Below, piece after piece: positions 8,483 through 64,000 of a stretch of DNA of 64,000 bases. The notes under the pieces are model-generated. The model ran no database searches. It was not told where the DNA came from and worked only from the letters and a program-made list of their open reading frames with translations. Source of the stretch: Macrostomum lignano (taxonomy: Eukaryota); contig NIVC01002732.1 in assembly GCA_002269645.1 (NCBI GenBank), positions 81,522-145,521 of the forward strand, read 5' to 3'. The position numbers were made by a program, and so were the translations under genes. How positions within the stretch are numbered: position 1 is the first letter of the stretch; every line of letters begins with the position of its first letter.

Positions 8483-9620
8483 CCACAGAATATCGCCACT
8501 AATCCACCCTGAGAATCGCCACTAATCCACCTTGAAGATCGCCCCTAATCCATCCTGAGAATCGCCCCTAATCCACCCTGAGAATCGCCACTAATCCACC
8601 TGGAAAAGCGCCCTAATCCATCCTAAGAATCGCCCCTAATCCACCTTAAAAATCGCCACTAAACCACCTGAGAATCGCCACCAAAATAGCCTAAGAATCG
8701 CCCCTAATCCACCTTGAGAATCGCCACCAAAATAGCCTAAGAATCGCCCCTAATCCACCCTGAGAATTTCCACTAATCCACCTTGAAGATCGCCCCTAAT
8801 CCATCCTGAGAATCGCCCCTAATCCACACTGAGGATCGCCCCTAATCCACTCTGAGAATCGCCCCTAATCCACTCTGAAAATCGCCCCTAATCCACACTG
8901 AGAATCGCCCCTAATCCATCCTGAGAATCGCCCCTAATCCACCCTGAGAATCGCCACTAATCCACCTTGAAAAGCGCCCTAATTCATCCTAAGAATCGCC
9001 CCTAATCCACTTTAAAAATCGCCACTAAACCAACTGAGAATCGCCACCAAAATAGCCTAAGAATCGCCCCTAATCCACCTTGAGAATCGCCACCAAAATA
9101 GCCTAAGAATCGCCCCTAATCCACTCTGAGAATCGCCCCTAATCCACCCTGAGAATCGCCCCTAATCCACCCTGAGAATCGCCCCTAATCCACCCTGAGA
9201 ATCGCCACTAATCCACCTTGAAGATCGCCCCTAATCCATCCTGAGAATCGCCCCTAATCCACCCTGAGAATCGCCACTAATCCACCTTGAAAAGCGCCCT
9301 AATCCATCCTAAGAATCGCCCCTAATCCACCTTAAAAATCGCCACTAAACCACCTGAGAATCGCCACCAAAATAGCCTGAGGATCGCCCCTAATCCACAC
9401 TGAGGATCGCCCCTAATCCACTCTGAGAATCGCCCCTAATCCACACTGAGAATCGCCCCTAATCCACACTGAGAATCGCCACTAATCTATCTTGAGATTC
9501 GTCCCGAATCCACCTTGAGAATCGCCACTAATCCACCTTCGAATCGCCCCTATCCATCCACCCTGAGAATCGCCACTAACCCACCCTGAGAATTGCATCT
9601 AAGCTGCCATGATAATCGCC
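8483..9620. repeat. 23-bp minisatellite (GAGAATCGCCCCTAATCCACCCT)n, related to the array at 1-788
   Basis: Direct periodicity; shares the AGAATCRCCCCTAATC core. Confidence 0.95.
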
Positions 9621-10034
9621 CTTAAACCAAAGCTGAATATAGAAGTAATTTACCATGGGAAATCGAGTGCTATCGTAAAAAGTTGATTTTGAAATGCGCA
9701 GGCGTGGCCATTCTCAACTTAATTATTTACAGAAGTGGAAAGCAGCCGCCTCACCTGGCCAATTTACTGGTGCAATTAATACAACTTTTCTGCGCAAAAA
9801 ATTCCACAAATTACTTTCTTCGTAGCTAATTTTCTTTCTTACAAAAGATGAGAATGCGGTGGTCGATGGATCGTGAGACTAAAAAAGTATATATTGCCGG
9901 TATCGGTGTAGAAAATTTAGATAACATCTTGCTTGAAGAAAGCCAGCGTTGCTTTTATGCAATCATTTTCGCCGTTCATTTGACTTTATTAACTGTAAGT
10001 TTGTATTGCATTTGGCATCTGGGCGTATTGCACA

Positions 10035-44327: not shown

Positions 44328-44440
44328 TACGTTTTCAGCCAGTCAGGCGTAAGACTACGTCACAGGGCTTGGGCGCAAACGTAGGACGCACCGCCGGTAG
44401 TGTCGAGCAGGCAGTCGACGAAACACCGAGCGGTCCTTCG
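44328..44440 (-). mobile_element. Short 3' end of an RTE-like element
   Basis: Shares CGTCACAGGGC...GCAGGCAGTCGACGAAAC with 63125-63225; (TTG)n tail on the minus strand. Confidence 0.55.
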
Positions 44441-45122
44441 GATCTACTCTAATCACATGCCCGACCGCATCAGGTGTCTCACCGACTCCCAGGCGCTTCT
44501 CCGCTCCCTCCAGCGAGGCCCTGCAAAAGCGCGCTCTCCGGGCTGCTGTACGATCTGGGAACTCCTCGTCTCCATCTCGGCCTCCACGCACGTAGATCTT
44601 CAATGGGTGCCAGGACACGCTGGACTCCGCCTCAACGACCTGGCGGACGCCACCGCCAAAGCTGGATCGGCTCTTGACCAGACTCACGCAAAAATCAGCC
44701 TGGCCGCTGCTAAAGCGGCGATCGACCGATCAGCCAAGTCTACCGAGCGGACCCGCACTGCATCACTCACCGCCTAACCACCGGGGACGGCGCCAAAATC
44801 AAGAGATATCTCCCCAGACATGACGAGATCTCCCTCGCCCAACTCCGGACTGGTCACTCCCCCTTGCTCCAGCAGTACCGTCACCGCATTGGCCAAGCCG
44901 ACAGCCCCTACGTGCCCGCACTGCGGCGAAGCCGATGAGGACCTGGAGCACCTGATCAAGGTTTGCCGCTCTCACCAACAGGCCAGAGACCGGCACCTCG
45001 GCGAAAACCCGAGCCTCCAGACGCTCAGCAACATCAGCAGGCAGGTGATAGACTTCTTAAAGGAGGTCGGGGCTCAGACCCGCCCCCGGACTGACCGGTC
45101 GGAAATAACAACAACAACAACG
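44441..45122 (+). mobile_element. 3' fragment of an RNase H-containing non-LTR retrotransposon (degenerate, in-frame stop at 44775-44777)
   Basis: RNase H motifs CLTDSQALL and LQWVPGHAGLRLNDLADATAK, a CCHC knuckle CPHCGEADEDLEHLIKVC, and an (ACA)n tail. Confidence 0.85.
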
Positions 45123-45535
45123 AAACACCGAGTGCGCACCTGCTCCTCCTGCACCAATTGCGGGCAGCACGGCTCGGATGATATGGCCTGCCAAGTCGCC
45201 GACGGCGCAACAGTTCGCTGGGACGGGGCAGGGATAGAGTGCCGCATTGGTGACTCGCTCGTAGCCGATCTTAAAGGCGGCGCGCAGCAGGCCAGCGTGC
45301 GCCGCATCGACCAGCCGTTCGAGCGAATCCGTCAGCGACCAGGTCTCGGCGTTGAAGAACAGGACGGTCTCGATCACCGACAAGAACAACGCCGCCCTCG
45401 GGCGGTCAGGTAGGGCCTCGGACTGCTGGACAGCCCTCACAGAACGGAAGACAGCCCAGGCAAGTTTACGACGACGTCGTAAATCCTCGCGAACGTCAGG
45501 CACCAGACTGCCGAAGTAGACGAACTGCTGTCCAC
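45105..45535 (-). mobile_element. 5'-truncated RTE-clade non-LTR retrotransposon fragment
   Basis: QQFVYFGS...REDLRRRRKLAWAVF...IETVLFFNAETWSLT...GHIIRA, typical of the RTE post-RT region; (TTG)n tail; paralogous to 63090-63795. Confidence 0.8.
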
Positions 45536-46997: not shown

Positions 46998-49900
46998 ATG
47001 GATTTGCTGCAACTGATACTCGCTGCCTTCCTAGGCAGCCTCTTGGCATTTGAAACCGGCTCTGCTGTCGCGGGTGAGTCTGATTGCTGCTGCCAACATT
47101 TCAAATGCGTCGCATCATAATGCTAGGGACTGCGAACTGCAGCCTCTGATCGAGTTTGATTTTCGACCGACTGGCTGACCGTAATGTGATGTTTTGAAGC
47201 CATTGATAACATGCGCTTGATGGTGTTATCAATAACAGGTAGGACTTGTATTTATGACTGAGTTCTTCCATGGCTGTTTGCTCTCATCCCTGATCGATGG
47301 GTTGATCCAAATATCAGTTTTAAAACGGTACTAAAATGCTCTAGTAAATGTACTACATAAATACAAATTTACAAATCCAAGAAACAAAATATTGTTTCTG
47401 CCAACAGCGTTAGACTCTTATCTCTAGACTCTCAGCAGCAGTCACTAACCCAGGTCCTAGCATGTAGAATTAGGGGTACCGGAGTAGTCAGTTACTGACC
47501 CAAATTTATTCGTGACAGATATTTGTAGTTTCCTACTTTTATAGATGTACTGGTAAGTTTTGCTGACTATTTACTTTCAATTGCTATGTCGAAAAATAGA
47601 AATTCTATGTCGAAGAACTAATTAATCGTCCTATTTGCAAATCGTGAAGCGATCATGTGCTCTTCCGGGGTTTATTTAAGGGTTTCTGAAGCTACAATTT
47701 AAAAAGTTACCTTATCAAAATGATGTATGTTTCCCACTTATCTGGATTATCTGGCGGACAATTTACGAGCGTACTTACCTGGGGAAATGCAAGGCAAAAT
47801 GGGTGATATTCGTTATAAATATTGATACAGAAAGCTACCTCAAAAGTGCGTTTTTTTTCTACAGAAACATTCCAGAGAAGCAACAATAGTTTTCATCGTT
47901 ATAGACATATTTCTTGACAAATTTCACAAATTGATCAAGGTGAAACCTCACCTTACGGCTTTCAATAAAACGCTTTTATGCAGTTATACTGTCTGTCTGT
48001 CTGTATGCGTATGCCATATTTACTTCTATCCTGTCATATGATGAAGAGCTATGTTAAAATGTTAAAGAGAATGTTAAAACGCTTTATTAATGTTATCAGT
48101 AGCTATTCGTTGGAAATATACTAATTGTGTTGCAATCGTCATAAACAGTCAGAATTCGGATCCCGAATTTCACTGCCGATAATTTAGGCTAGGGCCGGCG
48201 GTCAATTTGTAGCAGTTAAAGTGTTGGCTGACAGACAAGATGAGGCAGTCAAAATTCGTAAAACCATCAAAAGTTCTAGACTGTTTTGCAATTAAAGCAG
48301 TTCTGTGAGCACTGTTTCTCCAAGTACTGATGTGGTCCCTGATCCACAGTTTCAGTCCCGGCCGACACTGGAACAATTCAGTGTCCGGAAAACTTCGGGG
48401 AGCCCGGCGTCATCTATGAGAACTCCAAAGTCTACAACTGGACCATTCGCGGGCCGAAGGTTGTAGCCATTCGATTCCACTTTGTGGAACTGGAGACCCC
48501 ATACGACCGCTTGGAGATTTTCGAGAGTACGGACGATCTCGAAACAACGTATCTCAGGACTCCGAAATTCCGAATCGATCCTAATAACGCTACATCCCAA
48601 GTGCTTGTGCTTATTGCTCCTGTGCTAATTCGATTTAGCACAGATAGTAGCGTCGGAGAGAGGGGATTCAACCTAACCTACACGCTTGAGGAATCATTGG
48701 GTGAGTAACGTTGTTGTCAGGCTATTGTCTCACGAGTTATTCAATGATGGCTAAAAGGATAAAAATAATTGGAATTAGTATACGTGGTCGAGCTGATAGT
48801 TGACTAGCTACCCAATTTTCGCAATTTTAGTTCGATACAGAACTTTCACCGAGCCCAGCGACGACGCAATCTGCTCAGAGCTGGAAATCTCGGATCGAGA
48901 CACCAGCAGTGTTAGCATCGAATACCAGTGGCTCATTGACCGACCCGGGAGAATCGACCTCAAGCTGTCCTTCTCTGACCTCGCTCGGATCTACCAGATG
49001 ACGACAACTCCAGACAAGGAGCCCGTCTTCACCGATGGACCAAAGGAGAGAGAAGGGACGTCGCGTTTCCGACTGTTCGGTCCTGTGCTGGTGCAGATTA
49101 CGAGGAAAAAAACAAGGGGACGAGTTTTTAGGCTGTCCTACAGCAGTAGCGACGAAGGTAATTCTGGACTTAAAGTGACTTGCTAAAGTTTAGGGTGACT
49201 CTGCTTTCAGACCATTCCAATGATTATTCCATTCTCACTTCAGATCTGGAAATGCCTACTGAAATAATCAAAAATGAAGAGGGAGAGAGAATCTGTTACC
49301 AAAGTAAAGGTACCGACATCGCTGTGAGCAACGTCGCAACAAGAGCATGGTCTATCGCCGTGAATCCCCAGCAAATCGTTGAGCTCGAGCTATTTGATGC
49401 CGATGGAAGTCAGCCTCATACGGATACGATAAGCGTGTATAATGGCGTTCGTCCTCTGCTGAGCGAGTCCCCGATATTCAGTCAGACTGGACTACTTGGT
49501 GAGAGGAAGGCCGTGAGAGCGAACGGATTCGTCACTGTGGTGCTGACGACAGAAGCCAGACGATCACGACGTGGGCTCGGTCTCTCCTACACTGTGTACA
49601 GCAGTAAGAATCGTTTTGAACTATGATAATCGAAGTGCAAAGAAAAGCTTAGCATATAGTGCGATGTAGGGCATAATAGCCAAATGCGTGAGTCACATAA
49701 ATCAGGTAAAAGTGAATCAGAATATACACAGTCAATACAATGACAATTTCAACAACTTTGTTGGTGACTAAAACTCAATCAGTAATATTTCCACACTTTC
49801 ATTAAGCTTCTCAAGAGGAACCGAGTGGGCGGATAGAGTTCCCCAAGGGCTCAGCGGAGTTCAACAGCGACATAGATTACCGCTGGTTCATTAGCAGAGA

Positions 49901-52900
49901 CATTAGACTCAGCATCCGATTCACCTCCATAAGCCTCCATCCCAATGGCAAGCTGTACATCTACGAGAACACAACGTCTGAGGACGAATCGGCTCTGAGA
50001 TTCCTGGTGACGGATGCGAGCTCCAGAGAGTCGGAGTTCCGTCTGTCCGGTCCCGTCATGATTCGATTAGTTGCCAGCGGAGACGGCGAGTCGAGAGGCT
50101 TTCGGCTGTCGTACGCAGCTGACCAGTCGGCCAGTGAGTGACAATTTCCTAAAAATTTGTCTTCGCTGTCTCTTTGGTGACAAGCATAGATATGCGATTG
50201 ACGCAACTGCTTGTGTGACACTGCAGATACTGACATGGCTGTTGAGCTGATTGACGGCTATCGAGGCTCGAGATCTCTTATCCCCGAGAACGGGTCGCCT
50301 ACTGCATGGGTCATTGCAGCCAAGCCCGGGCGCTCAGTTCTGTTGAACCTGCCAGAGCTACCAGTGGTGTCAGGAATCGCAATAAGTCTCTATGAGGGAG
50401 CCGTCACCAGCTTGTCGAGTTCTGAGCTACTCCAGCGGATCCCGTATGCGAGCATCGTCAGGTACAACGGTCCTCTGACTGTGGTTTATCGACCAAGGGC
50501 TTCGAGCTTCATTAGATTTCAGCAAGAGTTCAAGTTTCAGTTAGCAAACGGTAATGAATGTTAGCATTTTTACGTATTGATGCAGTCATTGTCTTCTATA
50601 AGTAGTAATTTGCAATGTTGTTTAATGAAATTCTCAAAATGCGTTCAGATTTTAGTCGAATTTTATTTCACTGGCAAGCAGCTAAGAGCAACGTTGTTTT
50701 TCTTTCTTTTTTTTCAGCTCAAGAGCCTCTCATAAAAGATTCGGGGTCAATTCGATGTCCTCAGGTGTCTGGTGAGACCTACGAGAGCGAAATGGAGTAC
50801 AGATGGACAGTCAACCGGCTTAACTTAGTTGTTATCGAGGTCACAACCGTGGACATTGGGAGTGGCGTCATCGAGCTGTACGAGGAGACCTACCTGACCG
50901 ACGAGCCACAGCAGGCCAAGCTGAAGTTCGTTCTGACTCAGTCGAATGCTACAGCACGGGGGGCCTACCGACTGCCGGGTCCAGTCATGGTCCGGTTCGT
51001 CACGGGCAAAGATTTTGTTGGTCAGGGATTCAATCTGTCCTACACTACTGAAGAGCGGACTTGTAAGTCAGAATATTCATTTCATTGAGTTGCATCTTTA
51101 GGGTCATATTGAATTGTCGATTCTTATCTCAGCATGTTCATTTCATTGAGTTGTGACTTTAGGGTCTTATCGAATTGCCGATTCTTATCTCAGCAAGTCC
51201 ATTTCATTGAGTTGTGACTTTAGGGTCTTATCGAATTGCCGATTCTTATCTCAGCATGTTCATTTCATTGAGTTGTGACTTTAGGGTCTTATCGAATTTC
51301 CGATTCTTATCTCAGCATGTTCATTTCATTGAATTGTGACTAGGGTCTTATCGAATTTCCGATTCTTATCTCAGCAAGTTCATTTCATTGAGTTGTGACT
51401 TTGAGGTCTTATCGAATTGTCGATTCTTATCTCAGCAAGTTCATTTCATTGAGTTGTGACTTTGAGGTCTTATCAAATTGCCGATTCTTATCTCAGCAAG
51501 TTCATTTCATTGAGTTGTGACTTTAGGGTCTTATCTTTAGGGTCTTATCTTTAGGGTCTTATCTTTAGGGTCTTATCTTGATATCCACCAGAAAACTGGT
51601 GGATATCAAGAATTCCAATTCTTTTGAATTCTCTTTAAGCTACTAACTGAGAGATGATTATAGCTAGCATAAAACTTACTGTGTAGAAATACTCTCATTT
51701 ACGTTTTGCAGTACACCGAATGTTGAATTATGACTCCGGCAATATTTTCTGCCCCGAGACCGCACTGGTGAACTATGAGAAGTCCATGGACTACCGATGG
51801 ACAATCAATCGAAAAAGCATCATCGTCATTCGGTTCGACTTTATTGACATTCAAGACACCATCGAGTTCTATGAGAAGGTCGATGAGAGTGGAGAGCCAG
51901 ATCGGCAGAGATGGAAGCTCAATGTGACTCAGGAGGCTGCAGAAGCGTCGAATATTACGCTGGTTGGACCAGTGCTCATCCGGTTCAGAACGAACTCTCA
52001 AGTTACTGCTCCCGGCTTTCAGCTCTACTATCAGGCTGGCAGAAAAATCTGTAAGCATCCAATTCGCAATGTTTCCGTGAAATTTGTTAGCACATATTGC
52101 CTAAAAGCTTTCAGTCTTTCTGGGAATATTTTGTCTGCACATACTAAACAACCGCTTTTTACTCGTTATTATATTTTCCTTAAATCCTTCCAGTGGACAG
52201 TGGAAACCTTTCATATCCGGAGAACTATGGATACTCTAAGTACGATAACAACGTTGACTACGAGTGGAGCATCAATGAGCAGAAACCGGTGGTGCTTACG
52301 TTCATTCGCTATGATACTGAGAGAATTTATGATTGGATCGGCTTGTACGAAAACTCACCGGTGCATGAGAAGCCTGACGAAAATAAACTAAAGTACAGGC
52401 TTACAGGGAGCGGATACGGTGAAACATACACCTTGAAGGGACCAGTGCTCATCAGGTTCAAAACTGACGGCAGTACCAATCGTGACGGGTTTCGCATGAC
52501 ATACTATCTAGAAGAAACCTCAAGTAAGAAATAATTAGTATAGTAATTTTCTATCAAAGTTTGATTATAATTTGATTTTAATTAGAATTTAGGAGTTCAT
52601 GATAGATTTCTGCATTGTCTTACCTGGTTCGTAAAAATTAAAAATTTATGTATTCACGGCAAACAGTAGTTCATTATTTTTATATTCATGAAAGCTGCTT
52701 CATAAGACGAGTTAAAAATTTGAATTCGAACTTTCAGGTCTGTCAGGCGACTCGGGTGAAGTTCGGTGGGTGAACCCGCCATCATTCACCAAAGCCCAGG
52801 TAAACTACATTTGGAAAATCGACCGAAAGGCAGCTGTGGCAGTCAAATTCAGTGGGGTGGAAATCTCAGACTGCTGCGACAAAATCCAGTTATGGAGAAA

Positions 52901-55900
52901 GGACTCGTCAACTGCAAACATTACACTGACGAAGGGGAATGCTACTTCATCTACATACAGACTGATCGGACCTGGTATGATCAAGTTAGTTACAGCTGGT
53001 CGGCCAATGCAAAGAGCTCTAAACTTTTCCTATGAAATAGGAGACCAATTCGGTATGCTGATGTCACTTTGATGTTTTTGATCCCATCTTCGCGTCTTTG
53101 GTATTTTCTATTGTCTGAAAATAATGCACGGTTTCTATAATATTTTAGTAATATCCAGTGTTCTGACACAGACTCAAGGTGAAATTGGAGTGCAGTCAAG
53201 CAACTTGAGGAATGCCATTGGGCTGGATGTCTGCGATACTGATGGCTACGACATGCAGATTGACCGCAGGTGGGTTGTCGACACAACAGCGGCGGTCAGC
53301 ATTCGATTCGTGCAGGCTCAATTGCTAAGCGGTTGCGACAAGCTAGAGCTGCACGAGAGGACGAAGATCCCAACTCCAAGGAGTCGCGTGTTCTCCCTGA
53401 CTGATGCACCGCTCAGCGATTTGATGTCTACCGAGTTCAAACTAAGAGGCCCAGCAGTTGTTCGGCTTCAATCGCGAAGGATGAGGCCGACGATAGTGCC
53501 GTTCGGGGCGACGTTCAGTGTCAACCGACAAAGTGAGGCAGTCTGAAAGCGACAATCAATTTGTATCTCTAGATAGGAACAGTGACTTTTCTAAATAACT
53601 TCCCCGCAGATTTATCGATGACGACTGCGCTTTTGCGAAACTTGAACGGACTGCAGGGCTGCCTCATGCCCGATGGTCGAAGCAGCTGCGGACCGAGTTC
53701 CGCAAGAGCCTGGTCCATCGCTGTGAGCCCTCAACAGACTGTGGAGCTGCAGCTCTTTGATGCCGAAGGAGGCCAGCCGCATGGCGATACAGTCAGTGTG
53801 TACACGGGAGTTGAGCCCAGGCTCAGCGAGTCTCCCATTTTCAGTCAGACTGGCCTACTTGGCGAGAGGAAGACCCTGAGAGCGAGCGGATTCGTCACCG
53901 TAGTGCTGAGAACCGACGACGCCAATGAAGCAAAGCGAGGGTTCGGCCTCAAGTATTCAGTGGAAAACGGTAATTACACATACTTTGTTTTCATTTTTTA
54001 ACAATAACTAATGTAAAAATATAGTCATACTACTTTAGTCTGCAAGATCTATTCTTCTTTGCACTTAAAGTTTTACTGTCGGGACGATCCGGAGAAATCA
54101 GGTTCCCTCAAAACTCGTCGGCGGATAGTTCAGCTTTCGACTTGGACATGGATTACAGCTGGATCATTCAAAGCAGCGGTTCTGTTCGCATCAATGTTCG
54201 TTCCCTCAATCTCCAGAACGGAGACAAGCTTCATCTGTACGAAAACACCACGTCCAAGGATGAGCTCAAGAGAAGATTTGTGCTAACAGATGCGAGTGCC
54301 AGCGAGTCGGAGTTCTGGCTGAGAGGATCTGTTTTGATTCGCATCACGGCAGCGGGAGACGGCAGCCCGAGAAGCTTCCGGCTGGCATATCAGTCAGATC
54401 CCGATTTGAAGTGTAAGCCTTTAGAGAAGTCGCGTGCATATTAAAACTAAAACTACATGTACGTAATCGTGAACCATTTTTATCCCAATCAAACCTTGCA
54501 GTGGAAAATGCGGTTGAAGTAGTGAAGAGCAGTCGAGGTACCAGATGGAGCTTCCCTAAATTTGATACCACCGACAGGAGTGAAAGAGCAAAAATTGTTT
54601 GGGTCATTGCGCCAAAGCCGAGTCATGAATTCACCGTTCATATTCTTTTCAAAGTAGAAGGATTTTTTGAATTTTTTCCCGGTTCGTATACCTGCGGTTG
54701 GTTCGTTTATGCTGGAAATTGGCTTACTCAGAGACTCTCCAATGATAGCTTTGAGGCTCAGTTCAAAGGACTGACACAGCACGTCAGTCAAAGTGGACCT
54801 GTTTCCGTTTACTGGGAACAGATACAAGAGTCTCATATTGCTTCCCGCTGTACTGATTTGGTCTTTCAATTCGATTATCAAATCAGAAACGGTGAGCTCT
54901 TGCCCTTTTCAGTGCACAGTGAGACCATGGTGAGACCATAAGCCTTACTTCCTTTCAGTGCATCGCTACCTTAGCGAGGACTCTGGAAGCCTTCGCTGTC
55001 CAGAGGAATCCAGCTCGACTTACGCTAACGAGATGGAGTACAGATGGACCATCAACAGAAGGAATTTCGTCCTCATCACTGTCACATCTGCTGACATTGG
55101 CTACGGAAATGACATCATCCAGTTGTACGAGATGACTGATGGAGAAACCGATGAGCCAGAAGAGAGCAAGCTGAGGTTCACACTGACGCAGGCGAATGCG
55201 ACATCGGCAACGTATAAGTTGATTGGTCCCGTGCTGATCCGGTTTAGCACGGATGAGTCTCTTGTTGGCCAAGGCTTCAATTTGTCTTATGCTGTTGAGG
55301 AACGAACTTGTGAGCCATTTTGGTGTTTTATGCATTTACTTGGTTTAAAATTTTGAGTTCATGGTGTAAAATTTAGTAGCTCTGCGTATTCCGACGCTCG
55401 GTTTTTATGCACGTGAGTGTTTCTCCACCAAGCCACTTCTTTTAAATTTTTAGTTTCCCGTAATCTGCTGAACGATTCGGGCAGCATCAGGTGTCCGAAT
55501 GAAGAGTATGAAGCCTACGAGCATCAGATGGACTATCGTTGGTACATCCCATCGAGCAGAGTTGTCTTTTTGACAGTTAGAAGCATGGGCATTCAGGACG
55601 CAAACGATGTGGTTGAATTCTATGAAAAGACTGACTCTTCGGCGGAACCGCAGACTGAGAACAGAAAATACACACTGACTGGAGACAGCTGGAGCTCAAG
55701 AAAGTATGTTTTGATTGGACCTGCGTTGATCCAGTTTAAAACTGATCGTCAGAACGCGTCAAGAGGCTTTATAATCGATTATTATCTCGATCGATACGTG
55801 GGTGAGTTTCGAATTCCTGAGTTCCAGATACTCTCATTACTGTTTATAGTAATTGGTAATGTTAATTATTATTATTTAAGTTAAATTTTAGCATGCAAGG

Positions 55901-58900
55901 TGGGTCTAAATTTGAGCCAATGCAAAGCATCTGATGTCTATTCAATTTTCGATGCCTTTTCAGTCGACTCAGGAAAGCTTCAATGCCCAGAGAACTTCGG
56001 CAGTGGCAACTATTTAAACAGCAAAACGTACGCCTGGTGGATCGGCGATCTGAGCCTGCTCGAGATTAAGGTTGACTCGTATGACGTTGAAGCGGGAATC
56101 GATAAAATCAGTTTCTATGAGAAGACTCAGCTTTCTGAAGATGCTCAGGATTCTGAGAAAGTGTTTACTGTGACAAGAAATAACAAAACAGCCCAGGTCG
56201 TTGGTCCGGTGCTGATCCAATTCGTTACTGACTACAGTGTCACCAAGGCGGGCTTCAACTTATCTTACTCGGCTCTTGACAGCAGAAGTAAGTTGTTGTT
56301 AATTAAGTCAGTCAGTAAACATTTACAGAGAGTGACAAAACAAAGCAAAACAAAACAAACAGAAAGTGAAGTTACTGTTTCCGTCAACCTACTAATTTAC
56401 ATCTTTAATATTCGTATCATTCCTCAGTACGCTCTGAATGAAACCGTTTTAGTAAAATCGAGAAACCTGACAGACGAAAAAGCCGATGTTGTCTGCTCTG
56501 AAGGCGAGCAGCTTCCTGCGGAAGAAGAGATGAAGTATGACCTCGAGACTGACTACAGGTGGCTCATTGATCGTCAAGGCTGGGTCTCGCTGAAGCTGTC
56601 TCACGCAGATATTGTCAGACTGTACGAGATGACTGCTGACCCCAGCGAGGACAGGCTGGCCTTCGTCTCTGAGCACAGGTCAATGACGAACGCGACCTCT
56701 GTAGAGTTCAGGCTGAGAGGTCCCGTGCTGGTTCGAGTCACCACAAAGCGGGTCAGTGGCAACATCTTCAAGCTGTCGTATCAGAGCGGGAGCGAAGGTA
56801 AAATATGATCATTTTCCATCTATTCATCATTTAAAGGAAATATTATAAATAAGCTTTTGAGTCCCAGATAAATGATTGTTCAACTGCTCAAACACGTTTA
56901 ATAAGTATAAACACGCCTTCATTACAGAGCATTCAATGTGTACAGACGCTTGATATGCTTAAGGTCGGTTTGCCATGGACAACTGAAGTGAACGGCACAC
57001 TCGATTCTTTTAGAAATGAGGTGCACGCTTGTAAAGATAGAATATTTTCCGAATCGCTAGAGAGTGCACGGCTCTGAAGGGGGCTTTGCTATAGAATGAT
57101 TCGGTCGAAAAAACCCTGCGATAGAAAATCCGACTTCTCGAGAGCAAAAGCACTAGCGATGCGACAATTATACTCGTACTATATGTTCCTTACCTTCAGC
57201 TCATTTCTGGGAAAATCGATTTAGCGTCTTTCTACTGTACTTCAATTTTCAATGCGGTTCGCACTGCCGTTGGTGACTCAGTGGCTCCATTATTGGTCAA
57301 ATCAATGAAAAATTATTTCTAAACTAATTCACTCCAGTTTATGGGATATATCAACCGCGGAAATGACAACGACAGTTCGGACCGTGTTTATGTTCAGCAA
57401 TAGCATGTAGGGCGGATAGACGAAACTGGGCGGGCAGTCACCACAGATTATACGACAGCGGGTAATAATATACCTTTTTACGTTCTATTTGATAAAAACT
57501 GCAACCAATTTGGCCACGGCTCAGCCTGACCATAGACATAGAATTTTCCATAGACAGCCACCGCTGGCGGCAGCCAATTTGGTGAAAACTGCGAGCTATT
57601 TTTCCAGCTTGAAGATAGCAGCTGCTCTGATGGCGAATCGTGGGCCGTACCAAAAGATAAGTCAGCTGGATCGAGAGCGAATCGTGAGAGCGTACAGGAG
57701 TGGCGACGACTGGAGAGAGCTTGGCAGAATGATGGGGATGAAGAAACCGACAGTGAGGAACATCGTGACCACGTATGAACGAACTGGTAGAGTTGGCAGA
57801 TACTGGACTGGCTGCTGCAGCAGGTGCGACACTGCATCAGCACAGGATGCGCATTCTGAAGAGAGAAGTGCAGCAAGCACTGAACTGCATCACGCCTCTC
57901 AAGTGCCTGCGCTGGATCAACCATTCCCAGACGTACTTCAATCGGTGCTTGAATGCTGAGGACATAATGTTCTGACTTCGTGCATGTATTGTTAACATTC
58001 TTTATCGTTATTGTTATGCTATTGAGCTGCTATCTTCAAGCTGGCAAAATAGCTCGCAGTTTTTACCAAATTGGTTGCCGCTAGCGGTGGCTGTCTATGG
58101 AAAATTGCTGCGGCTGCGTCAGGCTGAGCCGTGGCCAAATTGGTTGCAGTTTTTATCAAATAGAACGTAAAAAGGTATATATAGTGTCTTCGATAGGAAA
58201 CGATGATTAATTGCCGAGTTCAGTGTAACAAACTTAACCAGCGAACACATTCTTACACCTTTTCACGTTCAATTTTGATCAAAGTCCAGTTGGGCCCAGT
58301 CTAACCCCAGTTCAAAACATTCTAACCGAAGTAAGGTTTAGCCATAGACAAAATTATCCTCAGTCTGAATTGAATTTCCGCTAGTTTTTTTAGAACTGGA
58401 CTTTGATCAAAATTGAACGTGAAAAGGTGTAGTATCGCCAGCACTCTTGCCTTTCACTGTTTGCTAATGGCCGGATAATAGCTGGACTCATATTTACCCT
58501 CGCATTATCCCAGAACTACCGATGCCGACTGAACTCATCAAAAACATTGAGGGAAGCAAAGCAATTTATCCGTCCAGAGGACCATTGGGCTCATCGAGAG
58601 CCTGGTCCATCGCTGTGAACCCTCAACAGACGGTTGAGTTGCAGCTCTTTGATGCCGAGGGAGGCCAGCCCCATGACGATACAGTCAATGTGTACACGGG
58701 AGTTGAGCCCAGGCTCAGCGAGTCTCCCATATTCAGTCAGACTGGCCTACTTGGCGAGAGGAAGACCCTGAGAGCGAGCGGATTCGTCACCGTGGTGTTG
58801 AGAACTGGAGCCAGCGGAGACAAACTCGGCTTGAGGTTCACCTACTCCGTTGGGAATGGTGAGTTGAGTCCGAAGTCTGCTGCGTCTTTGTCATCTAAGT

Positions 58901-61900
58901 AGTTCCACCCTTTCCTCTTATTGCATCTTATAGTTCAAAGCAGGCCGCTTTGACCTCTAGATTTGACCTCCTAAACGCCTGCCACAAATTTCAGTTTCTC
59001 TGAGTGATGCCGAAGGAGAAATCAGTTACTCCTCGCAAAGTGAAGCAACTGTTGGCAACCTGGACCATCGATGGATCATCGACAGAAGCGGCACGGTTCG
59101 CATCAGGTTCAGCTCCATCAATCTTCCTGCTGGGGACAAAGTGTACCTGTACCAAAACACGAGGTCTGAGACGGAGGACAATCTGAAATTTGTGGTTTCC
59201 GATTCGAGTGCCAGCCAGTCAGAGTTCCGACTGTCCGGTCCCGTGCTGCTTCGGTTCACAGCCAACAGCGACGGCAGCCGCAGGGACTTCAAGCTCACTT
59301 ACACAGCTGATGGTTCGGCTGAAGGTAATTCCTTGTTTTGCTGAAGATTCAGAAAACTTCCTACTCAGAGATCACCTTTTTAAGTTAACACCTTAGCCAT
59401 TTCTTACATCCAAGTACGCCCTCATTCAAGGATTATGAGCTTTATATTATTTTTTTATTAGAGGCAGGGGGGTTGTGAGCACCCTGGAGCACTTTAAGCG
59501 ACATAGGCACACAACCGGCGAGAGGCATTACTGCCCATTCCGCCGACTCCCCTGAGCAGGCATACAAGCGCGCGGATACGTACGCAGGCACACATTCAAA
59601 CATGAGTGTACAGCGGCCCTAACTTATTTTATCGTTAGGCATGTACACTTCACTGCGCCTTGGGGGGTTGGCTCTCAAGGGCGTTAATTGCACGAGCAGA
59701 GCCAAGCCGAGATTCCAATTCAGCCCCAAATTAATGTGACTGCACTTGGAATCGAGCCTGGGTCGCTGGCACACTAGAGCCTGCGCTGGACCGCTGGGCT
59801 ACGCCCCCCCAGGATTATGAGCTTACCATTATTGTGACTGCATCGCCAAGAAAAATCTGGCCAGAACCTCCGTCTCAGTCATTTGATTCCAAAGACCACC
59901 AAATCATGAGCACTGAAACACAACTGAATCTTTCAGAGGCTTCACCAGCAACCGAGGTGATCAGGGGCAGCAGAGGCATGAGACTCTGCAATCCGGCGGA
60001 AGGATCTACCGTCCTCCCGAGACCTTCGAGCACAAAGTGGATTGTTGCACCAACTGGTTCTCATGATTTCCTGACGCACGTCATCTTTAACCGTATCACG
60101 ACTTCATCTTCTGTAGAGATATTCGCTGGCGACATGGATCTGCTAAGCAGCCCAGCGATGCTGAGAAGCGCGAGACGGATCCCATTTGCGAATCACGTGA
60201 CGCACAAAGGCATCCTTGCAGTTGTATATTCGTCCAACAACTCTGCTTCGGCGAGCGGTCAAGTTGTTTTCGATTATCAGATCAGAAGTGGTGAGAATTA
60301 TTTAGTTGCACATTGTATTGCGATAATATTAATCTGCTGATTGGCACTAAGTTCCTACTTTGCACAATGTGGGCAATGTGGTGCTTAAAATTTATTCACA
60401 TTTTCAGTGCACGTTGCCATGACCAATGACTCTGGTAGCTTTAGTTGTCCCGAAGAGACTGGCTCGACTTACGCTAACGAGATGGAGTACAGATGGACCA
60501 TCAACAGAAGGAATTTCGTCCTCATCACTGTCACATCTGCTGACATTGGCTACGGAAATGACATCATCCAGTTGTACGAGATGACTGATGGAGAAACCGA
60601 TGAGCCAGAAGAGAGCAAGCTGAGGTTCACACTGACGCAGGCGAACGCGACATCGGCAACGTATAAGTTGATTGGTCCCGTGCTGATCCGGTTTAGCACG
60701 GATAAACGGCTAGTCGGTCAGGGCTTCGACTTGTCCTATTCCATCGAGCCTAGGACTGGTAATTGCACTTTTTACACTTCCTCTGACTTTTTCCAATCAT
60801 CTCTGATCCCCGCTACTTTCAAACAGTTTCAGTTATCGCCAATCAGTCCCAAAGTTTTGCAATGATTCAGTGCCCAAACGATACCAACAGTACAATGGAG
60901 AAGTGGATGGAGTATAAGTGGCTGATTCCGGGCAAATATGTTTACAAGCTGGCTTTCAACCGGTCGAATCTCGGAGCAGATGGAAGCTTTATTGAAGTAT
61001 TTGCAATTTCTGATCAAGAAAGCGCCGATGCCGATGAGCAAAACTTGCTGTTCATTCTAACTGACGCGAATGCCACGTCAGCGGACTTTGTCCTGACGGG
61101 ACCCCTGCTGATTAGAGTTAAAACTGGCAGACGCTTTGATGGTCGGGCATTGCGTTCTCTTACAGACGCGGACCGGTTGTAGGTGAGCTTGAGGTGTTGA
61201 ATTTTTTACGATTGCATTCACCACTGAGAGGATTAAATATGTACTTCGCTTGATTTCATTCGACTGCAGCTCTAATCTAAATATACTAAATCCACCTATA
61301 CTAAAAATGGTTTTTCGGTAGGTATGTGTGTGCGTTTGTGTGTGATCGTTTTACTCAAACTTGCTAATTGAGTGCGAGAGTAACACGAGAGTACTTTTGT
61401 CTGAGCAAAGACCACTAGGAACATTTCGTCTAGTAGTCCTCGTCTCTGAGTAGAAGTGTAAGCTACTTTAAGAGTAAAAGGGTAGTCGTAGGTGTATAAG
61501 GTAATTAATAGTGTAGAATTTAATTTGATCAGTTTCGTTATTAGTAGTCGCAACTTTACGATGTACACAATGGCTTTAGAATGTAAATCGGGTGCAAATT
61601 GACCGCATTTCTTTCAGTTTCGGAGGACTTGGGCACGATCAAGTGTCCAAGCAACTATGGATCGTCGATGTACGCTAATAGCAAAGACTACCAATGGCTG
61701 ATCGACACGACGGCCCCGCCCCGTCAACATCCGGATGGAAGAAGTGGACATTGAGAACTGCTGTGACAAAATCTTCATATACGACAGATTCAGCATCTCT
61801 GATGAGGTAGACGATAGCAAGCTGACAACGAGTCTGGTTAACAACAATGCCACCGGAGTTTCACTAAGCCTGCAAGGTCCTGTGCTGGTTCGATTCAAAA

Positions 61901-62082
61901 CTGACTCAAGCGTTACTTCGAGAGGATTCCGCCTGATTTATTCTACACAAAGTCTGGACGGTGAGTTTTCTAAACTTTTGAGCAAATCAAATCGCTATTG
62001 AGGCACTAGTCAGTCACTTATATGATAAATAACTCTCGTACATTGTTCCTTTTCAGTCGGAAATACCACCAACCGGATATGA
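46998..62082 (+). CDS. Large predicted secreted multi-CUB-like protein (~2,680 aa, cubilin-like architecture): signal exon 46998-47073; 23 domain exons 48350-48700, 48831-49157, 49244-49603, 49816-50133, 50227-50550, 50718-51062, 51712-52050, 52194-52523, 52738-53052, 53149-53532, 53610-53969, 54071-54412, 54502-54891, 54959-55309, 55454-55801, 55964-56287, 56453-56797, 58514-58858, 58995-59324, 59937-60290, 60408-60758, 60827-61182, 61618-61960; terminal exon 62057-62082
   Basis: Signal peptide MDLLQLILAAFLGSLLAFETGSAVA. Each exon is AG/GT-bounded and phase 1-1; 21 of 23 have lengths divisible by 3. Recurrent CUB pattern DSGxIxCP..Y.N..YxWxI...D.I.xYE...GPVLIRFxTDxS...GFxLxY. No EGF or transmembrane exon found. 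Some acceptors could shift by one or two codons. Confidence 0.85.
48350..52050 (+). CDS. CUB-like cassette 1 (7 exons, types a-b-c-d-e-f-g)
   Basis: See the gene-level feature; exon types assigned by sequence similarity across cassettes. Confidence 0.8.
51075..51578. repeat. 61-bp intronic minisatellite (about 7 copies) followed by (TTAGGGTCTTATCT)x4
   Basis: TTCATTG recurs at 51081, 51142, 51203... Confidence 0.9.
52194..55801 (+). CDS. CUB-like cassette 2 (8 exons: a, extra, b-like, c, d, e, f, g)
   Basis: 53610 exon resembles 49244; 54071 resembles 49816; 54959 resembles 50718. Confidence 0.8.
55964..61960 (+). CDS. CUB-like cassette 3 (a-g) plus a final a-type exon; the last two exons are frameshifted as assembled
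   Basis: 56453 resembles 48831; 58514 resembles 53610; 58995 resembles 49816; 60408 resembles 54959. Confidence 0.75.
57471..58177 (+). mobile_element. Internally deleted IS630/Tc1-mariner-like DNA transposon
   Basis: ~155-bp TIRs starting TACCTTTTTACGTTC, TA TSDs (57469-70, 58178-79), N-terminal HTH remnant MANRGPYQKISQLDRERIVRAYRSGDDWRELGRMMGMKKPTVRNIVTTYERTGRV, and C-terminal remnant QALNCITPLKCLRWINHSQTYFNRCLNAEDI. The DDE core is absent. Confidence 0.85.
58256..58429. mobile_element. Tc1/mariner-type MITE (174 bp)
   Basis: Perfect 36-bp TIR CACCTTTTCACGTTCAATTTTGATCAAAGTCCAGTT with TA TSDs. Confidence 0.9.
59443..59810 (-). mobile_element. Full-length tRNA-derived SINE, family 2
   Basis: Minus strand GGGGGGGCGTAGCCCAGCGG (A box)...GGCTCGATTCC (B box), A-rich tail, and a 14-bp TSD AGGATTATGAGCTT (59429-59442, 59811-59824). 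Confidence 0.85.
61291..61433 (+). mobile_element. Possible short non-autonomous Helitron
   Basis: A|TC...CTAG|T ends and a TATACTAAAAATG + GT-rich 5' part shared with 39865-39985; subterminal hairpin is not convincing. Confidence 0.3.
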
Positions 62083-63089
62083 TCGGACACTTGCCTAATG
62101 CATAAAGCATGATTGATCAAAGATTGGTAAACACCGATCAGATGCAAATTAGCTAATCCAAAGAAAGACAAACTGAAGTGCTTTAGCGGACACTAAACGT
62201 TATCCGATATTCTAATCGTTTTCTTCATTAAGATATCATCTGCAGTTGATAATTTGTCCCACTTTGAGCAAATAACTCAACAATTATTTACTTTCACCTG
62301 TTGCTAGATTTTGCACGTGGGATTAAACGATTATTAGACGTGTGAAAGGATAAAAGATTATAATCTATAGGCATTATCTCATCATATTTTTGGATAATCA
62401 CCATGTCGCGTTTTTTCACATGCGAAGCAAGAACTTTAAATGATAATCAAAAGACTACTACGATTTGATGATTCTATATTGTATTATCATTTGAGCTGGC
62501 GATCCGTTTTTTTCTAATTTTACACAACTCCCTATTGACTCAAGCAATATTTTATATAGTTTACACGTTTACTTTGGCACTAAGCTGTGCTGTCCTGAAA
62601 CTAATAGTTTCCTGTTGGTACGCATCGACAATAGAAATGCTCTCTTCGACCATTTTCAATATAGAAATATAGCTAGCTATGACTAAAATTCTAAAGCAGT
62701 CCTTGAAAAACCGAATATGCATCTAACTGAGGGTTCACTTTATGCCTTGGAAAACTTTCTTCAACTTAAAAATCTATTTTAAGTCATTAACATCGGCCTT
62801 CTGATGGCTAATTAGTCAGTTTGCCGGGGCCTCTGGGTGGAAGTCAGCAAGTCAGCGAGGACACAAGCAGTCAGGCTCATTCCGCTGACCCTGGGTACTG
62901 TGATGCGAGAGTCGTACGCGTTAACTACCGCTGATCCAGTCCCGGCTTCTTTGATAGCGTTTCACTCTTAGAGTGTGCACGTTTTGGACTAACTTTTCAG
63001 TTTAAATATCCTATGTTTCGCCCAGATTATCTGGGTATACTTTAAATTTAATGAAAGCTACCTGTATTGCTAAAATATATATTAGTGGG

Positions 63090-63795
63090 AAGCAACAACA
63101 ACAACAACAACAGAATACGCCGTTCAGCGTCACAGGGCGCGTCAAGGCCATTGCGAATGAACGCCACGCCGCCGGCCGAATTCTCGGGCGCCGGCGTCAG
63201 CCAGCAGGCAGTCGACGAAACGCCGAGTGCGGGCCTGCCCCCGCCGGTTAGGGTGTCTGCAGCGATAGCAGCACCACCTCCTGCACCGGTTGCGGGCAGT
63301 ACGACGCGGCGTGAATGATGTGGCCTGCCAGCTGGAGTCGCCGACGGCGCAACAGGTCGCTTGGACAGACCAGGCCGGCGCGGCGATACAAAGTCGCGTT
63401 GGTCACTCGCTCGTAGACGATCTTGAAGGCGGCGCGCAGCAGGCCACCGTGCGCCGCGTCAACTTGTTGCTCGAGCGACTCCGTCAGCGTCCAGGTCTCG
63501 GCGTTGTACAGCAGGACGGTCTCGATCAGCGCCTGGAACAACGCCGCCCTCTTGGCGGTCAGGTAAGGCCTCTGACTGCAGGACTGCCCTCACAGAACGA
63601 AAGGCAGCCCAGGCAAGCCCGCAGCGACGCCGCAAATCCTCGCGGACGCGGGAACCAGACCGCCGAGGTAGACGAGCTGCTGACAACGCGGAAGCTCTGT
63701 CGCCTGTCCATCAGCGCCTCGGCACGAAATCGCAGCCTCGATGTCGTCCGGCACGCAGAGCACGACGGTCTTCTGAGTGTTGACCACCAGTTGAT
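63090..63795 (-). mobile_element. 5'-truncated, frameshifted RTE-clade non-LTR retrotransposon
   Basis: VNTQKTVVL...QQLVYLGG / REDLRRRCGLAWAAF / FQALIETVLLYNAETWTLT...LQLAGHII; (TTG)n tail at 63092-63112. Confidence 0.85.
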
Positions 63796-64000
63796 GTGTT
63801 CCTTACTACCAAGAATTCTAAGTAATCAAGGAACAATCACTTCTAGCTACTGCTAGGCAACCCAGTAATCAAATGAAGGTATCTCTTACTTGAGTTCTGA
63901 TCAGTAAATCTCTTCGCGTGCGTAGTTCTCTGTCTCAATCCGTTCAGACGTCTTGATCTAGTTGTTCTGATCCAGGTTCCATTTTAATTTCAACGAAGTT

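What the first reader, a model, noticed from the sequence alone, without database searches (positions are those of the whole stretch)
48350..61960. Seven-domain higher-order cassette repeated three times in the CUB-like gene
Exons fall into types: a (48350, 52194, 55964, 61618), b (48831, 56453, loosely 53149), c (49244, 53610, 58514), d (49816, 54071, 58995), e (50227, 54502, 59937), f (50718, 54959, 60408) and g (51712, 55454, 60827), plus one extra exon (52738). The order is abcdefg / a+bcdefg / abcdefg / a, or 7+8+7+1 = 23. Introns show no visible similarity, so the duplications are old but the order was kept. This implies a 7-domain structural or functional period, such as a super-helical repeat with periodic binding sites.
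Basis: partly seen in the sequence, partly recalled or inferred. Interest (0 to 1): 0.7.

Follow-up and report, generated by a model that had tools for sequence, protein, structure and literature searches.

The report
Flatworm 23-CUB gene, seven-domain cassette tripled
This is a real, already catalogued but unstudied gene of the flatworm Macrostomum lignano for a secreted protein of 23 CUB-like domains, built by an ancient triplication of a seven-exon block; this is an ordinary way for such genes to grow, and it does not by itself show a structural period.

Summary
On the + strand, 46998-62083 is one complete gene: a signal-peptide exon, 23 one-domain exons (all introns phase 1) and a 9-codon terminal exon. 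The domains follow the order abcdefg / a+x+bcdefg / abcdefg / a. With x removed, mean Smith-Waterman score is 218 at lag 7 and 216 at lag 14, against 56-89 at other lags; 0 of 100,000 order shuffles reach this. Types a, c, d, e, f and b1/b3 are supported. Type g cannot be told from f, and b2 is weak.

The cassettes are old: synonymous sites are saturated and no intron matches another cassette's intron. Two exon-internal gene-conversion tracts (f2/f3, c2/c3) show recombination still occurs between cassettes.

The gene is Macrostomum lignano "CUB domain-containing protein" (UniRef A0A1I8JLF6; PAA83892.1). A diverged second copy in the species has the same 23-domain order. No relative outside the species was found, and no paper mentions the gene.

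The domains are cysteine-poor CUB folds. Only the four a-type domains (positions 1, 8, 16, 23) keep the full Ca2+-binding CUB signature.

Best reading: tandem block duplication, as in the seven-domain repeats of complement receptor 1, giving a multivalent secreted binder. A strict structural ruler is unsupported and is weakened by the conserved eight-domain middle cassette.

The parts
46998..47073 (+). Exon 1: start codon and signal peptide MDLLQLILAAFLGSLLAFETGSAVA, with phase-1 donor GCGG|gtgagt. A TATA-like tataaata lies about 60 bp upstream.
   Evidence: Sequence read. The same N-terminus is joined to a1 in P0001, P0002, P0155 and P0156.
48350..48700 (+). a1. Tandem acceptors at 48350 and 48356. 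The only domain above Pfam's CUB gathering score. Full Y/E/D/D Ca2+ signature.
48831..49157 (+). b1
49244..49603 (+). c1
49807..50133 (+). d1.
50227..50550 (+). e1
50718..51062 (+). f1
51712..52050 (+). g1. f-like by sequence; type g by position only.
52194..52523 (+). a2, with full Ca2+ signature.
52738..53052 (+). x2: extra CUB-like domain of unresolved origin that keeps a CCDK motif. 99% identical in the second copy P0001.
53149..53532 (+). b2. Weak assignment; scores slightly better as d.
53610..53969 (+). c2
54071..54412 (+). d2
54502..54891 (+). e2
54959..55309 (+). f2
55454..55801 (+). g2 (f-like)
55964..56287 (+). a3, with full Ca2+ signature.
56453..56797 (+). b3. Alternative acceptors: 56453 (P0155) and 56474 (P0001, P0002).
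58514..58858 (+). c3. The AlphaFold2 model is a CUB jelly roll.
58995..59324 (+). d3
59937..60290 (+). e3
60408..60758 (+). f3
60827..61181 (+). g3. Database proteins use acceptor 60833. The reading frame is broken in the window by one missing G in a G run near 61143-61146. Donor is GTTGTAG|gtgagc.
61618..61960 (+). a4, with full Ca2+ signature. The frame is broken in the window near 61695-61710: GCCCCGCCCC where the intact proteins require six bases.
62057..62083 (+). Terminal mini-exon, ...VGNTTNRI then stop. ATTAAA at 62322.
   Evidence: The same C-terminus occurs in P0002.
55013..55254 (+). Gene-conversion tract inside f2. 242 nt with 1 mismatch to f3 60462-60703. The remaining 109 nt of the same exon pair have 43 mismatches.
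53705..53913 (+). Probable older conversion tract inside c2. 209 nt, 94.7% identical to c3 58597-58805. The exon ends and introns are unrelated.

Best explanation
Window 46998-62083 (+) is a complete Macrostomum lignano gene for a secreted protein of about 2,690 residues. It has a signal peptide, 23 consecutive CUB-like domains with one domain per exon, no other domain type and no membrane anchor.

All domain exons are symmetrical (phase 1 at both ends), so any block of them can be duplicated in frame. A block of seven already differentiated domains (a b c d e f g) was duplicated in tandem twice, most simply by unequal crossing-over. The a-type domain at both ends of the array (N cassettes plus one a) is what recombination between a-type repeats would leave. 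One further domain (x2) was added to, or retained only in, the middle cassette.

The events are old. Since then every type has been under purifying selection and has kept its own character. Short exon-internal gene conversions between cassettes 2 and 3 still occur.

Function (inferred): an elongated, N-glycosylated, multivalent extracellular binder. The four a-type domains at positions 1, 8, 16 and 23 are the canonical Ca2+-dependent ligand-binding CUB modules. The six or seven degenerate, cysteine-poor CUB-like domains between them act as type-specific spacer or accessory modules. This is the layout of complement receptor 1, where seven-domain repeats each carry a binding site at their start.

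Shown: the gene model, the periodicity, the age, selection, conversion, the fold, and the distribution of the Ca2+ signature. Inferred: secretion, Ca2+ and ligand binding, the unequal crossing-over mechanism, and the spacer role. The confidence given applies to the whole statement; the origin by block duplication alone I would put near 0.9, the functional reading near 0.4.
For: Gene model:
- 21 exons splice to 2410 codons without a stop.
- The signal-peptide exon and terminal exon were read.
- The model is 99.9% identical to PAA55601.1 (P0156), 98.1% to PAA83892.1 (P0155) and 94.6% to UniRef A0A1I8JLF6 (P0001).

Periodicity: lag-7 and lag-14 peaks, 0 of 100,000 permutations; tree; 18 of 22 domains correct in the leave-one-out test. 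All full-length copies in the species show the same 23-domain order, including one 86-99% identical per domain.

Age: dS >1.2 or not computable for all same-type pairs except f2-f3 (0.35) and c2-c3 (0.55). No intron-intron similarity between cassettes.

Selection: dN/dS is 0.13-0.34 where it can be estimated.

Conversion: a 242-nt tract with 1 mismatch, flanked in the same exon by 61% identity; the c2/c3 core is 94.7% identical.

Fold:
- The 23-domain profile hits PCPE-1 CUB2 (E 1e-8), cubilin and enteropeptidase over its full length.
- 9 of 23 domains hit Pfam CUB at E<=1 (best 2.2e-6; a1 scored 8.3e-6, 26.5 bits against the 21.4 cutoff).
- The divergent c type models at pLDDT 86.5, pTM 0.83. 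Its best structural matches are CUB domains of neuropilin-2, C1r, TSG-6 and PCPE-1, with TM about 0.7.
- The c/e class aligns colinearly to the other domains in hhalign, E 1.3e-4.

Ca2+ signature: E46, D50 and D96 are invariant in a1-a4 and align to the E of DLE, the D of YD and the D of SD in PCPE-1 CUB2. The full Y/E/D/D set occurs only in a1-a4. Acidic residues in loops L5/L9 form the Ca2+ site, and that site forms the ligand site in tandem CUB proteins (PMC8051872).

CR1 parallel: seven-SCR units arose by duplication and carry binding sites at SCR 1-3, 8-10 and 15-17 (PMC5612547).
Against: - Nothing is known about expression, tissue or ligand. No paper or searched supplement mentions the gene.
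- The a clade has only 10% bootstrap support. Type g is not separable from f.
- The order of the two duplications cannot be recovered: the c and f types say (1,(2,3)), b says (2,(1,3)), and d and e are uninformative.
- The origin of x2 is unresolved.
- The Ca2+ signature in the a type could simply be ancestral retention. Type a is also the least conserved type between the two copies in the species (86-94%).
- The canonical CUB disulfides are absent (0-3 Cys per domain), so stability and Ca2+ binding may differ from characterised CUB domains.
- The window copy has two frame breaks, in g3 and a4.
Confidence: 0.6

Rival explanations
1. One reading: structural ruler or super-helical repeat. Seven consecutive domains form one turn or one structural unit of a higher-order assembly, or match the period of a partner polymer, as titin and nebulin super-repeats do. 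Selection for that period is why the order is kept.
For: - Each domain type has kept its identity under purifying selection across cassettes despite saturated synonymous sites. Type c is 58-74% identical between cassettes.
- The same order is kept in the diverged second copy.
- Established knowledge: titin A-band super-repeats of 7 and 11 domains and nebulin 7-module super-repeats match filament periods.
Against: - The middle cassette has eight domains, and the extra x2 is among the best conserved domains between copies (99%). The spacing of a domains is therefore 7, 8, 7, not constant.
- Retention of order needs no selection after a tandem block duplication.
- No inter-domain structural evidence exists. 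The cassette-scale model failed (pLDDT 30, pTM 0.27).
- No partner polymer is known.
Confidence: 0.12
2. Pure history, no positional function. The cassette is only the footprint of two old block duplications. All 23 domains serve the same generic role, for example bulk structural or secretory glycoprotein. The Ca2+ signature of type a is merely the least-eroded ancestral state.
For: - Outside the species, only a-type domains find similar sequences, at about 30% identity to ordinary CUB domains. Type a therefore looks ancestral rather than specialised.
- a-type domains evolve fastest between the two copies in the species (86-94%).
- Ongoing gene conversion is a mechanical by-product of repeated DNA.
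Against: - dN/dS of 0.13-0.34 with very different type-specific conservation (c and f high, e and g low) argues that positions are not equivalent.
- The Y/E/D/D residues are invariant in all four a domains here and in P0001, although the rest of those domains diverges.
Confidence: 0.25
3. Assembly artefact. The threefold repeat arises from mis-assembly of a repeat-rich long-read genome rather than from the real gene.
For: - The window is very rich in tandem repeats.
- The copy here has two frame breaks, one in a G run and one in a C-rich run.
- f2 and f3 share a near-identical 242-nt tract.
Against: - Cassettes differ at saturated synonymous divergence and have unrelated introns, which collapse or duplication errors cannot produce.
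- Five independent database entries from other contigs, plus a UniRef entry 94.6% identical, have the same 23-domain order.
Confidence: 0.02

Closest known systems
Complement receptor 1 (CR1/CD35) long homologous repeats
   Same: - Many small extracellular domains of one fold in tandem, organised in higher-order units of seven that arose by duplication of a seven-domain block.
- Binding sites recur at the start of the units: SCR 1-3, 8-10 and 15-17 (PMC5612547). Here the Ca2+-signature a domains sit at 1, 8, 16 and 23.
   Different: - The CR1 domains are CCP/sushi, not CUB.
- CR1 is membrane-anchored.
- CR1 repeats are young, highly similar at DNA level and copy-number polymorphic. Here the cassettes are saturated at synonymous sites and share no intron similarity.
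- One cassette here has eight domains.
Titin and nebulin super-repeats (established knowledge)
   Same: Higher-order periodicity of 7 (or 11) domain types in a very long chain of one-fold domains. Position-specific conservation exceeds conservation between neighbouring domains.
   Different: Those are intracellular proteins whose period matches a known filament lattice. Here there is a signal peptide, no known partner lattice, only three cassettes, and an irregular 7/8/7 spacing.
Cubilin (27 CUB domains) and other multi-CUB proteins (CSMD1-3, PCPE-1, tolloids)
   Same: - A long run of CUB domains in a secreted or peripheral protein.
- The domain profile matches cubilin and PCPE-1 CUB domains.
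- A subset of domains carries the Ca2+-binding signature that those proteins use for ligand binding (PMC8051872).
   Different: - No EGF, sushi or protease domains.
- The two canonical CUB disulfides are missing (0-3 Cys per domain).
- Only 1 of 23 domains passes Pfam's CUB threshold.
- There is a seven-type higher-order order.
- No orthology: identity is about 30% and only to type a.
Macrostomum lignano database entries: A0A1I8JLF6, A0A1I8GGR3, PAA83892.1, PAA92424.1, PAA55601.1 (BOX15_Mlig033186 / Mlig028314)
   Same: They are the same gene or its near-identical copies in the species: 94.6-99.9% identity and the same 23-domain order.
   Different: - They are annotated only as 'CUB domain-containing protein' or 'hypothetical protein'. 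No description of the cassette organisation was found.
- The g3 and a4 frames are intact in those entries but broken in the window.

Membership tests
CUB domain (Pfam PF00431) | Sequence match to the family profile above the curated threshold | tested here: inconclusive
   - a1 passes (26.5 bits against the 21.4 cutoff, E 8e-6).
- 9 of 23 domains match at E<=1, but the others are below threshold.
- A profile of all 23 domains matches solved CUB domains over its full length: PCPE-1 E 1e-8, cubilin 1.4e-6.
CUB domain (Pfam PF00431) | Beta-sandwich jelly-roll fold of about 110 residues | tested here: met
   - The AlphaFold2 model of the divergent c3 domain has pLDDT 86.5, pTM 0.83 and nine strands.
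- Its best Foldseek matches in the PDB are CUB domains: neuropilin-2, C1r, TSG-6, PCPE-1, MASP; TM 0.6-0.73, E down to 1e-5.
- The e type was not modelled. It is linked to c by a tree bootstrap of 1.0 and to the rest by hhalign E 1.3e-4.
CUB domain (Pfam PF00431) | Four conserved cysteines forming two disulfides (established knowledge of the family) | tested here: not met
   - 0-3 cysteines per domain, 23 in the whole 2,689-residue protein. No domain has the canonical four.
- Only x2, b2 and a4 keep a Cys at the C-x-(Y)D position.
Ca2+-binding CUB subset (cbCUB) | Tyr, Glu, Asp, Asp signature in loops L3/L5/L9 | tested here: met
   - Met in a1, a2, a3 and a4 only.
- Partial in c2 (E, D, D) and in f2, f3 and g2 (Y, D, D).
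- Absent elsewhere.
- Actual Ca2+ binding cannot be tested here.
Higher-order (super-)repeat proteins of the CR1-LHR kind | Domain similarity peaks at a fixed lag greater than 1, with colinear domain types in each unit | tested here: met
   Lag-7/14/21 peaks, 0 of 100,000 permutations. 18 of 22 leave-one-out assignments are correct.
Higher-order (super-)repeat proteins of the CR1-LHR kind | Units similar at DNA level including introns, with copy-number polymorphism | tested here: not met
   - No intron similarity between cassettes. Exon DNA is only 65-78% identical outside two conversion tracts.
- All full-length copies seen have the same number of cassettes.
Titin/nebulin-type structural ruler | Repeat period matches the period of a partner lattice; constant unit length | tested here: not met
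   - Unit lengths are 7, 8 and 7 domains, and x2 is conserved at 99% between copies.
- A partner lattice cannot be tested with these tools.
Cubilin | N-terminal EGF repeats followed by 27 CUB domains; orthology | tested here: not met
   - No EGF or any other domain type: the signal peptide joins directly to a1.
- Similarity to outside proteins is about 30% and limited to type a.

The most novel reading that the evidence does not exclude
A Macrostomum-restricted, cysteine-free branch of the CUB fold has diversified into seven fixed subtypes. Together these form a defined seven-domain functional module: one Ca2+-dependent binding domain plus six specialised accessory domains. The module is used three times in one secreted giant protein, for example as a multivalent cross-linker in a secretion such as adhesive, eggshell, seminal fluid or extracellular matrix. 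On this reading the cassette, not the single domain, is the unit of function.
Probability: 0.2. Interest if true: 0.5.

Novelty: new member of a known kind. Interest (0 to 1): 0.3.

Why it matters
The locus is a clean example of how symmetrical phase-1 domain exons let a whole block of differentiated domains be copied in frame. The result is a CR1-like higher-order repeat in a different fold (CUB) and a different phylum.

It also flags an unstudied, apparently lineage-restricted giant secreted protein in a laboratory flatworm in which RNAi, in situ hybridisation and transgenesis are available.

The four a-type domains give a concrete hypothesis that can be tested by mutation: Ca2+-dependent binding sites spaced by six or seven degenerate domains.

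It does not open a long-standing question, and the mechanism of origin is textbook.

Tried and rejected
1. Word-indexed protein search with the spliced cassette 1 (787 aa) and with the c3 exon: no hits at E<=0.001 either time. The M. lignano entries do exist in the collection, so that route seems blind to them.
I used an alignment of single-exon translations instead.
3. Biopython bootstrap run: timed out. Replaced by my own NJ bootstrap.
4. Structure of more than one cassette: P0153, 1191 aa, b1 to d2, single sequence. Result pLDDT 30.3, pTM 0.27, which is unusable. It says nothing for or against a super-helical arrangement.
5. c/e-class profile against PDB sequences: only chance-level hits, E>0.3. 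The CUB assignment of c rests on the fold comparison instead.
6. Literature and supplements:
   - 'Mlig033186' occurs in no paper.
   - Mlig033186, Mlig028314 and Mlig029297 are absent from the held supplements of PMC5816591, PMC5730564 and PMC7336406. No expression data were obtained.
7. Origin of x2 (degenerate a domain at a duplication junction, or a copy of f): scores are too close to decide (f 50.5, a 47.4, d 44.2 bits).
8. Order of the two duplications: the domain types disagree with each other, partly because of gene conversion. Not resolvable.
9. Assembly artefact: rejected (see rivals).
Full report
WHAT IS THERE. The window is eukaryotic. Between 46998 and 62083 on the + strand lies one complete gene.

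Exon 1 (46998-47073) encodes MDLLQLILAAFLGSLLAFETGSAVA, a typical signal peptide by inspection. It ends in a phase-1 donor, GCGG|gtgagt.

Twenty-three exons of 315-390 bp follow. Each starts at an AG acceptor with two bases completing a split codon and ends one base into a codon before GT. Every intron is therefore phase 1 and every exon is symmetrical. Introns are 67-1716 bp.

Exons a1 to f3 splice to 2410 codons without a stop. A last mini-exon (62057-62083) adds VGNTTNRI and a stop.

An HMM built from seven clear domains finds copies only in 48364-61950 on the + strand. So the 23 domains are the whole family in the window, and the protein has no other domain type and no membrane anchor.

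IDENTITY. An exhaustive profile search with the 23 exon translations returned two outstanding hits: P0001 (2681 aa, 23 matched stretches, 2096 bits) and P0002 (1932 aa, 1530 bits). The next hit scores 464 bits and is a protein of near-identical canonical CUB repeats.

P0001 and P0002 and their cluster mates are Macrostomum lignano entries. These are UniRef A0A1I8JLF6 and A0A1I8GGR3, 'CUB domain-containing protein', and PAA83892.1, PAA92424.1 and PAA55601.1, 'hypothetical protein BOX15_Mlig033186 / Mlig028314'.

My model is 99.9% identical to PAA55601.1 over a1-e2, 98.1% to PAA83892.1 and 94.6% to A0A1I8JLF6. Those entries confirm the signal-peptide-to-a1 junction, the terminal exon and all exon junctions. 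There are four small differences in acceptor choice: 48356 as well as 48350, 49807 for d1, 56474 as well as 56453, and 60833 for g3.

No paper mentions the gene, and three supplement sets do not list it.

CHECK OF THE OBSERVATION. I translated each exon and compared all against all.
- Same-type identities: c 58-74%; f 57-87%; d 45-49%; b1/b3 40%; a 32-42%; e 28-30%; g 25-37%.
- Unrelated pairs are mostly 5-35%.
- With x2 removed, the mean Smith-Waterman score is 218 at lag 7, 216 at lag 14 and 190 at lag 21, against 56-89 at every other lag. No permutation of domain order out of 100,000 reaches this.
- An NJ tree recovers a(1-4), c, d, e, f and b1+b3. Support is strong for e (0.98), fair for c, f and b1b3 (0.71-0.75) and d (0.56), and poor for a (0.10).
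- In a leave-one-out test with type HMMs, 18 of 22 domains fall in their own positional type. g1, g2 and g3 all score best as f, and b2 scores best as d.

So the cassette is real. The doubt about g was justified, because g is an f-like domain defined by position. b2 is indeed loose. x2 has no clear parent.

blastn of the locus against itself gives no intron-intron match between cassettes.

AGE, SELECTION, RECOMBINATION. Synonymous divergence between same-type exons is saturated (dS 1.2-3.2 or not computable). The exceptions are f2-f3 (0.35) and c2-c3 (0.55). Where dN/dS can be computed it is 0.13-0.34.

The two exceptions are mosaics.
- f2 and f3 share 242 nt with a single mismatch (55013-55254 and 60462-60703). 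The other 109 nt of the same exon pair have 43 mismatches, and the introns are unrelated.
- c2 and c3 share a 209-nt core at 94.7% identity, with diverged exon ends. At its N-terminus c3 resembles c1 rather than c2.

These are short ectopic gene-conversion tracts. They also explain why different domain types give conflicting cassette trees.

FOLD.
- a1 passes Pfam CUB, and 9 of 23 domains hit it at E<=1.
- The 23-domain profile aligns end to end with PCPE-1 CUB2 (E 1e-8), cubilin and enteropeptidase CUB domains.
- The c and e types are a separate, mutually related class (bootstrap 1.0). They align colinearly to the rest only at hhalign E 1.3e-4 and have no sequence hit in the PDB.
- An AlphaFold2 model of c3 (pLDDT 86.5, pTM 0.83) is a nine-strand sandwich. 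Its best structural neighbours are CUB domains, TM about 0.7.

All 23 domains are therefore CUB-fold, but atypical. They have 0-3 cysteines instead of the canonical four. Many share an N-A-T sequon in the same loop.

WHERE THE TYPES DIFFER FUNCTIONALLY. In tandem CUB proteins, acidic residues of loops L5 and L9 bind Ca2+ and form the ligand site (PMC8051872, read, citing Gaboriaud et al. 2011).

In the a-type alignment Glu46, Asp50 and Asp96 are invariant. They align to the E of DLE, the D of YD and the D of SD in PCPE-1 CUB2.

Tabulating those columns over all 23 domains shows the following:
- The complete Tyr/Glu/Asp/Asp set occurs only in a1, a2, a3 and a4.
- f2, f3 and g2 lack the Glu.
- c2 lacks the Tyr.
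- b, d and e have lost the signature.

The same residues are kept in P0001, although a-type domains are the least conserved between the two copies (86-94%). Outside the species, only a-type domains find similar sequences, at about 30% identity.

INTERPRETATION. Symmetrical phase-1 exons allow in-frame duplication of any block. The array is N cassettes plus one a. That is what unequal crossing-over between a-type repeats of an a-b-c-d-e-f-g-a ancestor would give; this is an inference.

Order is retained by default, so it is not evidence for a structural period.
- The middle cassette has eight domains.
- x2 is 99% conserved between the copies.
- My only cassette-scale model was useless.

The idea is therefore unsupported, and a strict form of it is unlikely.

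Type-specific purifying selection does show that positions are not equivalent. The a-type signature at positions 1, 8, 16 and 23 gives a CR1-like picture. In CR1, seven-domain units arose by duplication and carry binding sites at SCR 1-3, 8-10 and 15-17 (PMC5612547).

I therefore favour a secreted, glycosylated, multivalent Ca2+-dependent binder with spacer or accessory modules. Its biological role is unknown.

STATE OF THIS COPY. Relative to P0001 and P0002, the window lacks one G in a G run at about 61143-61146 (g3). It also has GCCCCGCCCC where six bases are required at about 61695-61710 (a4). Both breaks lie in the last two domain exons, while the preceding 2410 codons are open. They may be long-read assembly errors or a real 3'-truncating allele. 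I cannot tell which.

VERDICT. The gene is already in databases but uncharacterised, and the cassette organisation has apparently not been described. The origin by tandem block duplication is ordinary. The functional reading is a testable inference. Interest is modest.

Noticed in passing
window 61143-61146 and 61695-61710: Two frame breaks relative to the intact database proteins: one missing G in a G run in g3, and a 4-nt surplus (GCCCCGCCCC) in a4. Both lie in the last two domain exons, while the preceding 2410 codons are open. This is either assembly error or a real truncating allele followed by decay.
   Followed up: partly
window 1-36500: Almost continuous minisatellite arrays with periods of 11-82 bp. 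Examples: 82 bp x32 at 28392-31032; 23 bp x50 at 8492-9629; 15-bp CCTAATCCCAAATCC x48 at 32543-33260. Strand composition skews are strong.
   Followed up: no
window 37923-38129 (+), with possible upstream exons 36591-37858: An ORF with a Death domain (Pfam PF00531, E 8e-5). It is probably the last exon of a separate + strand gene upstream of the CUB gene.
   Followed up: no
window 44400-45503 and 63051-63856: Retroelement debris flanks the gene on both sides. There is an RNase H match at 44400-44777 (+) (PF00075, E 4e-6). Two minus-strand ORFs, 45057-45503 and 63251-63589, share a reverse-transcriptase-tail-like motif ...NAETW.LT.SLE..VDAAH.GLLRAAFKI.
   Followed up: no
window 57420-57956 (+), inside the 1716-bp b3-c3 intron: A Tc1/mariner-type transposase helix-turn-helix fragment (Sleeping Beauty HTH, E 5e-7, below Pfam's cutoff). 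It explains why this intron is ten times longer than the others.
   Followed up: partly
window 51068-51535 (f1-g1 intron): A 61-bp tandem repeat, 7.6 copies, 93% matches. It accounts for the 649-bp length of this intron.
   Followed up: no
window 48344-48356 and 60821-60833: The a1 and g3 exons both have tandem acceptors 6 nt apart with the same ...cagTTTCAG| sequence. Database proteins use both at a1, which adds or drops Ser-Val. Alternative acceptors 21 nt apart are also seen at b3 (56453 and 56474).
   Followed up: partly
protein searches (versus 40, 43): The word-indexed protein search returned nothing for sequences that are 95-100% identical to entries which the cluster look-up shows are in the same collection. 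Absence of hits from that tool is therefore not evidence of absence for this organism.
   Followed up: no
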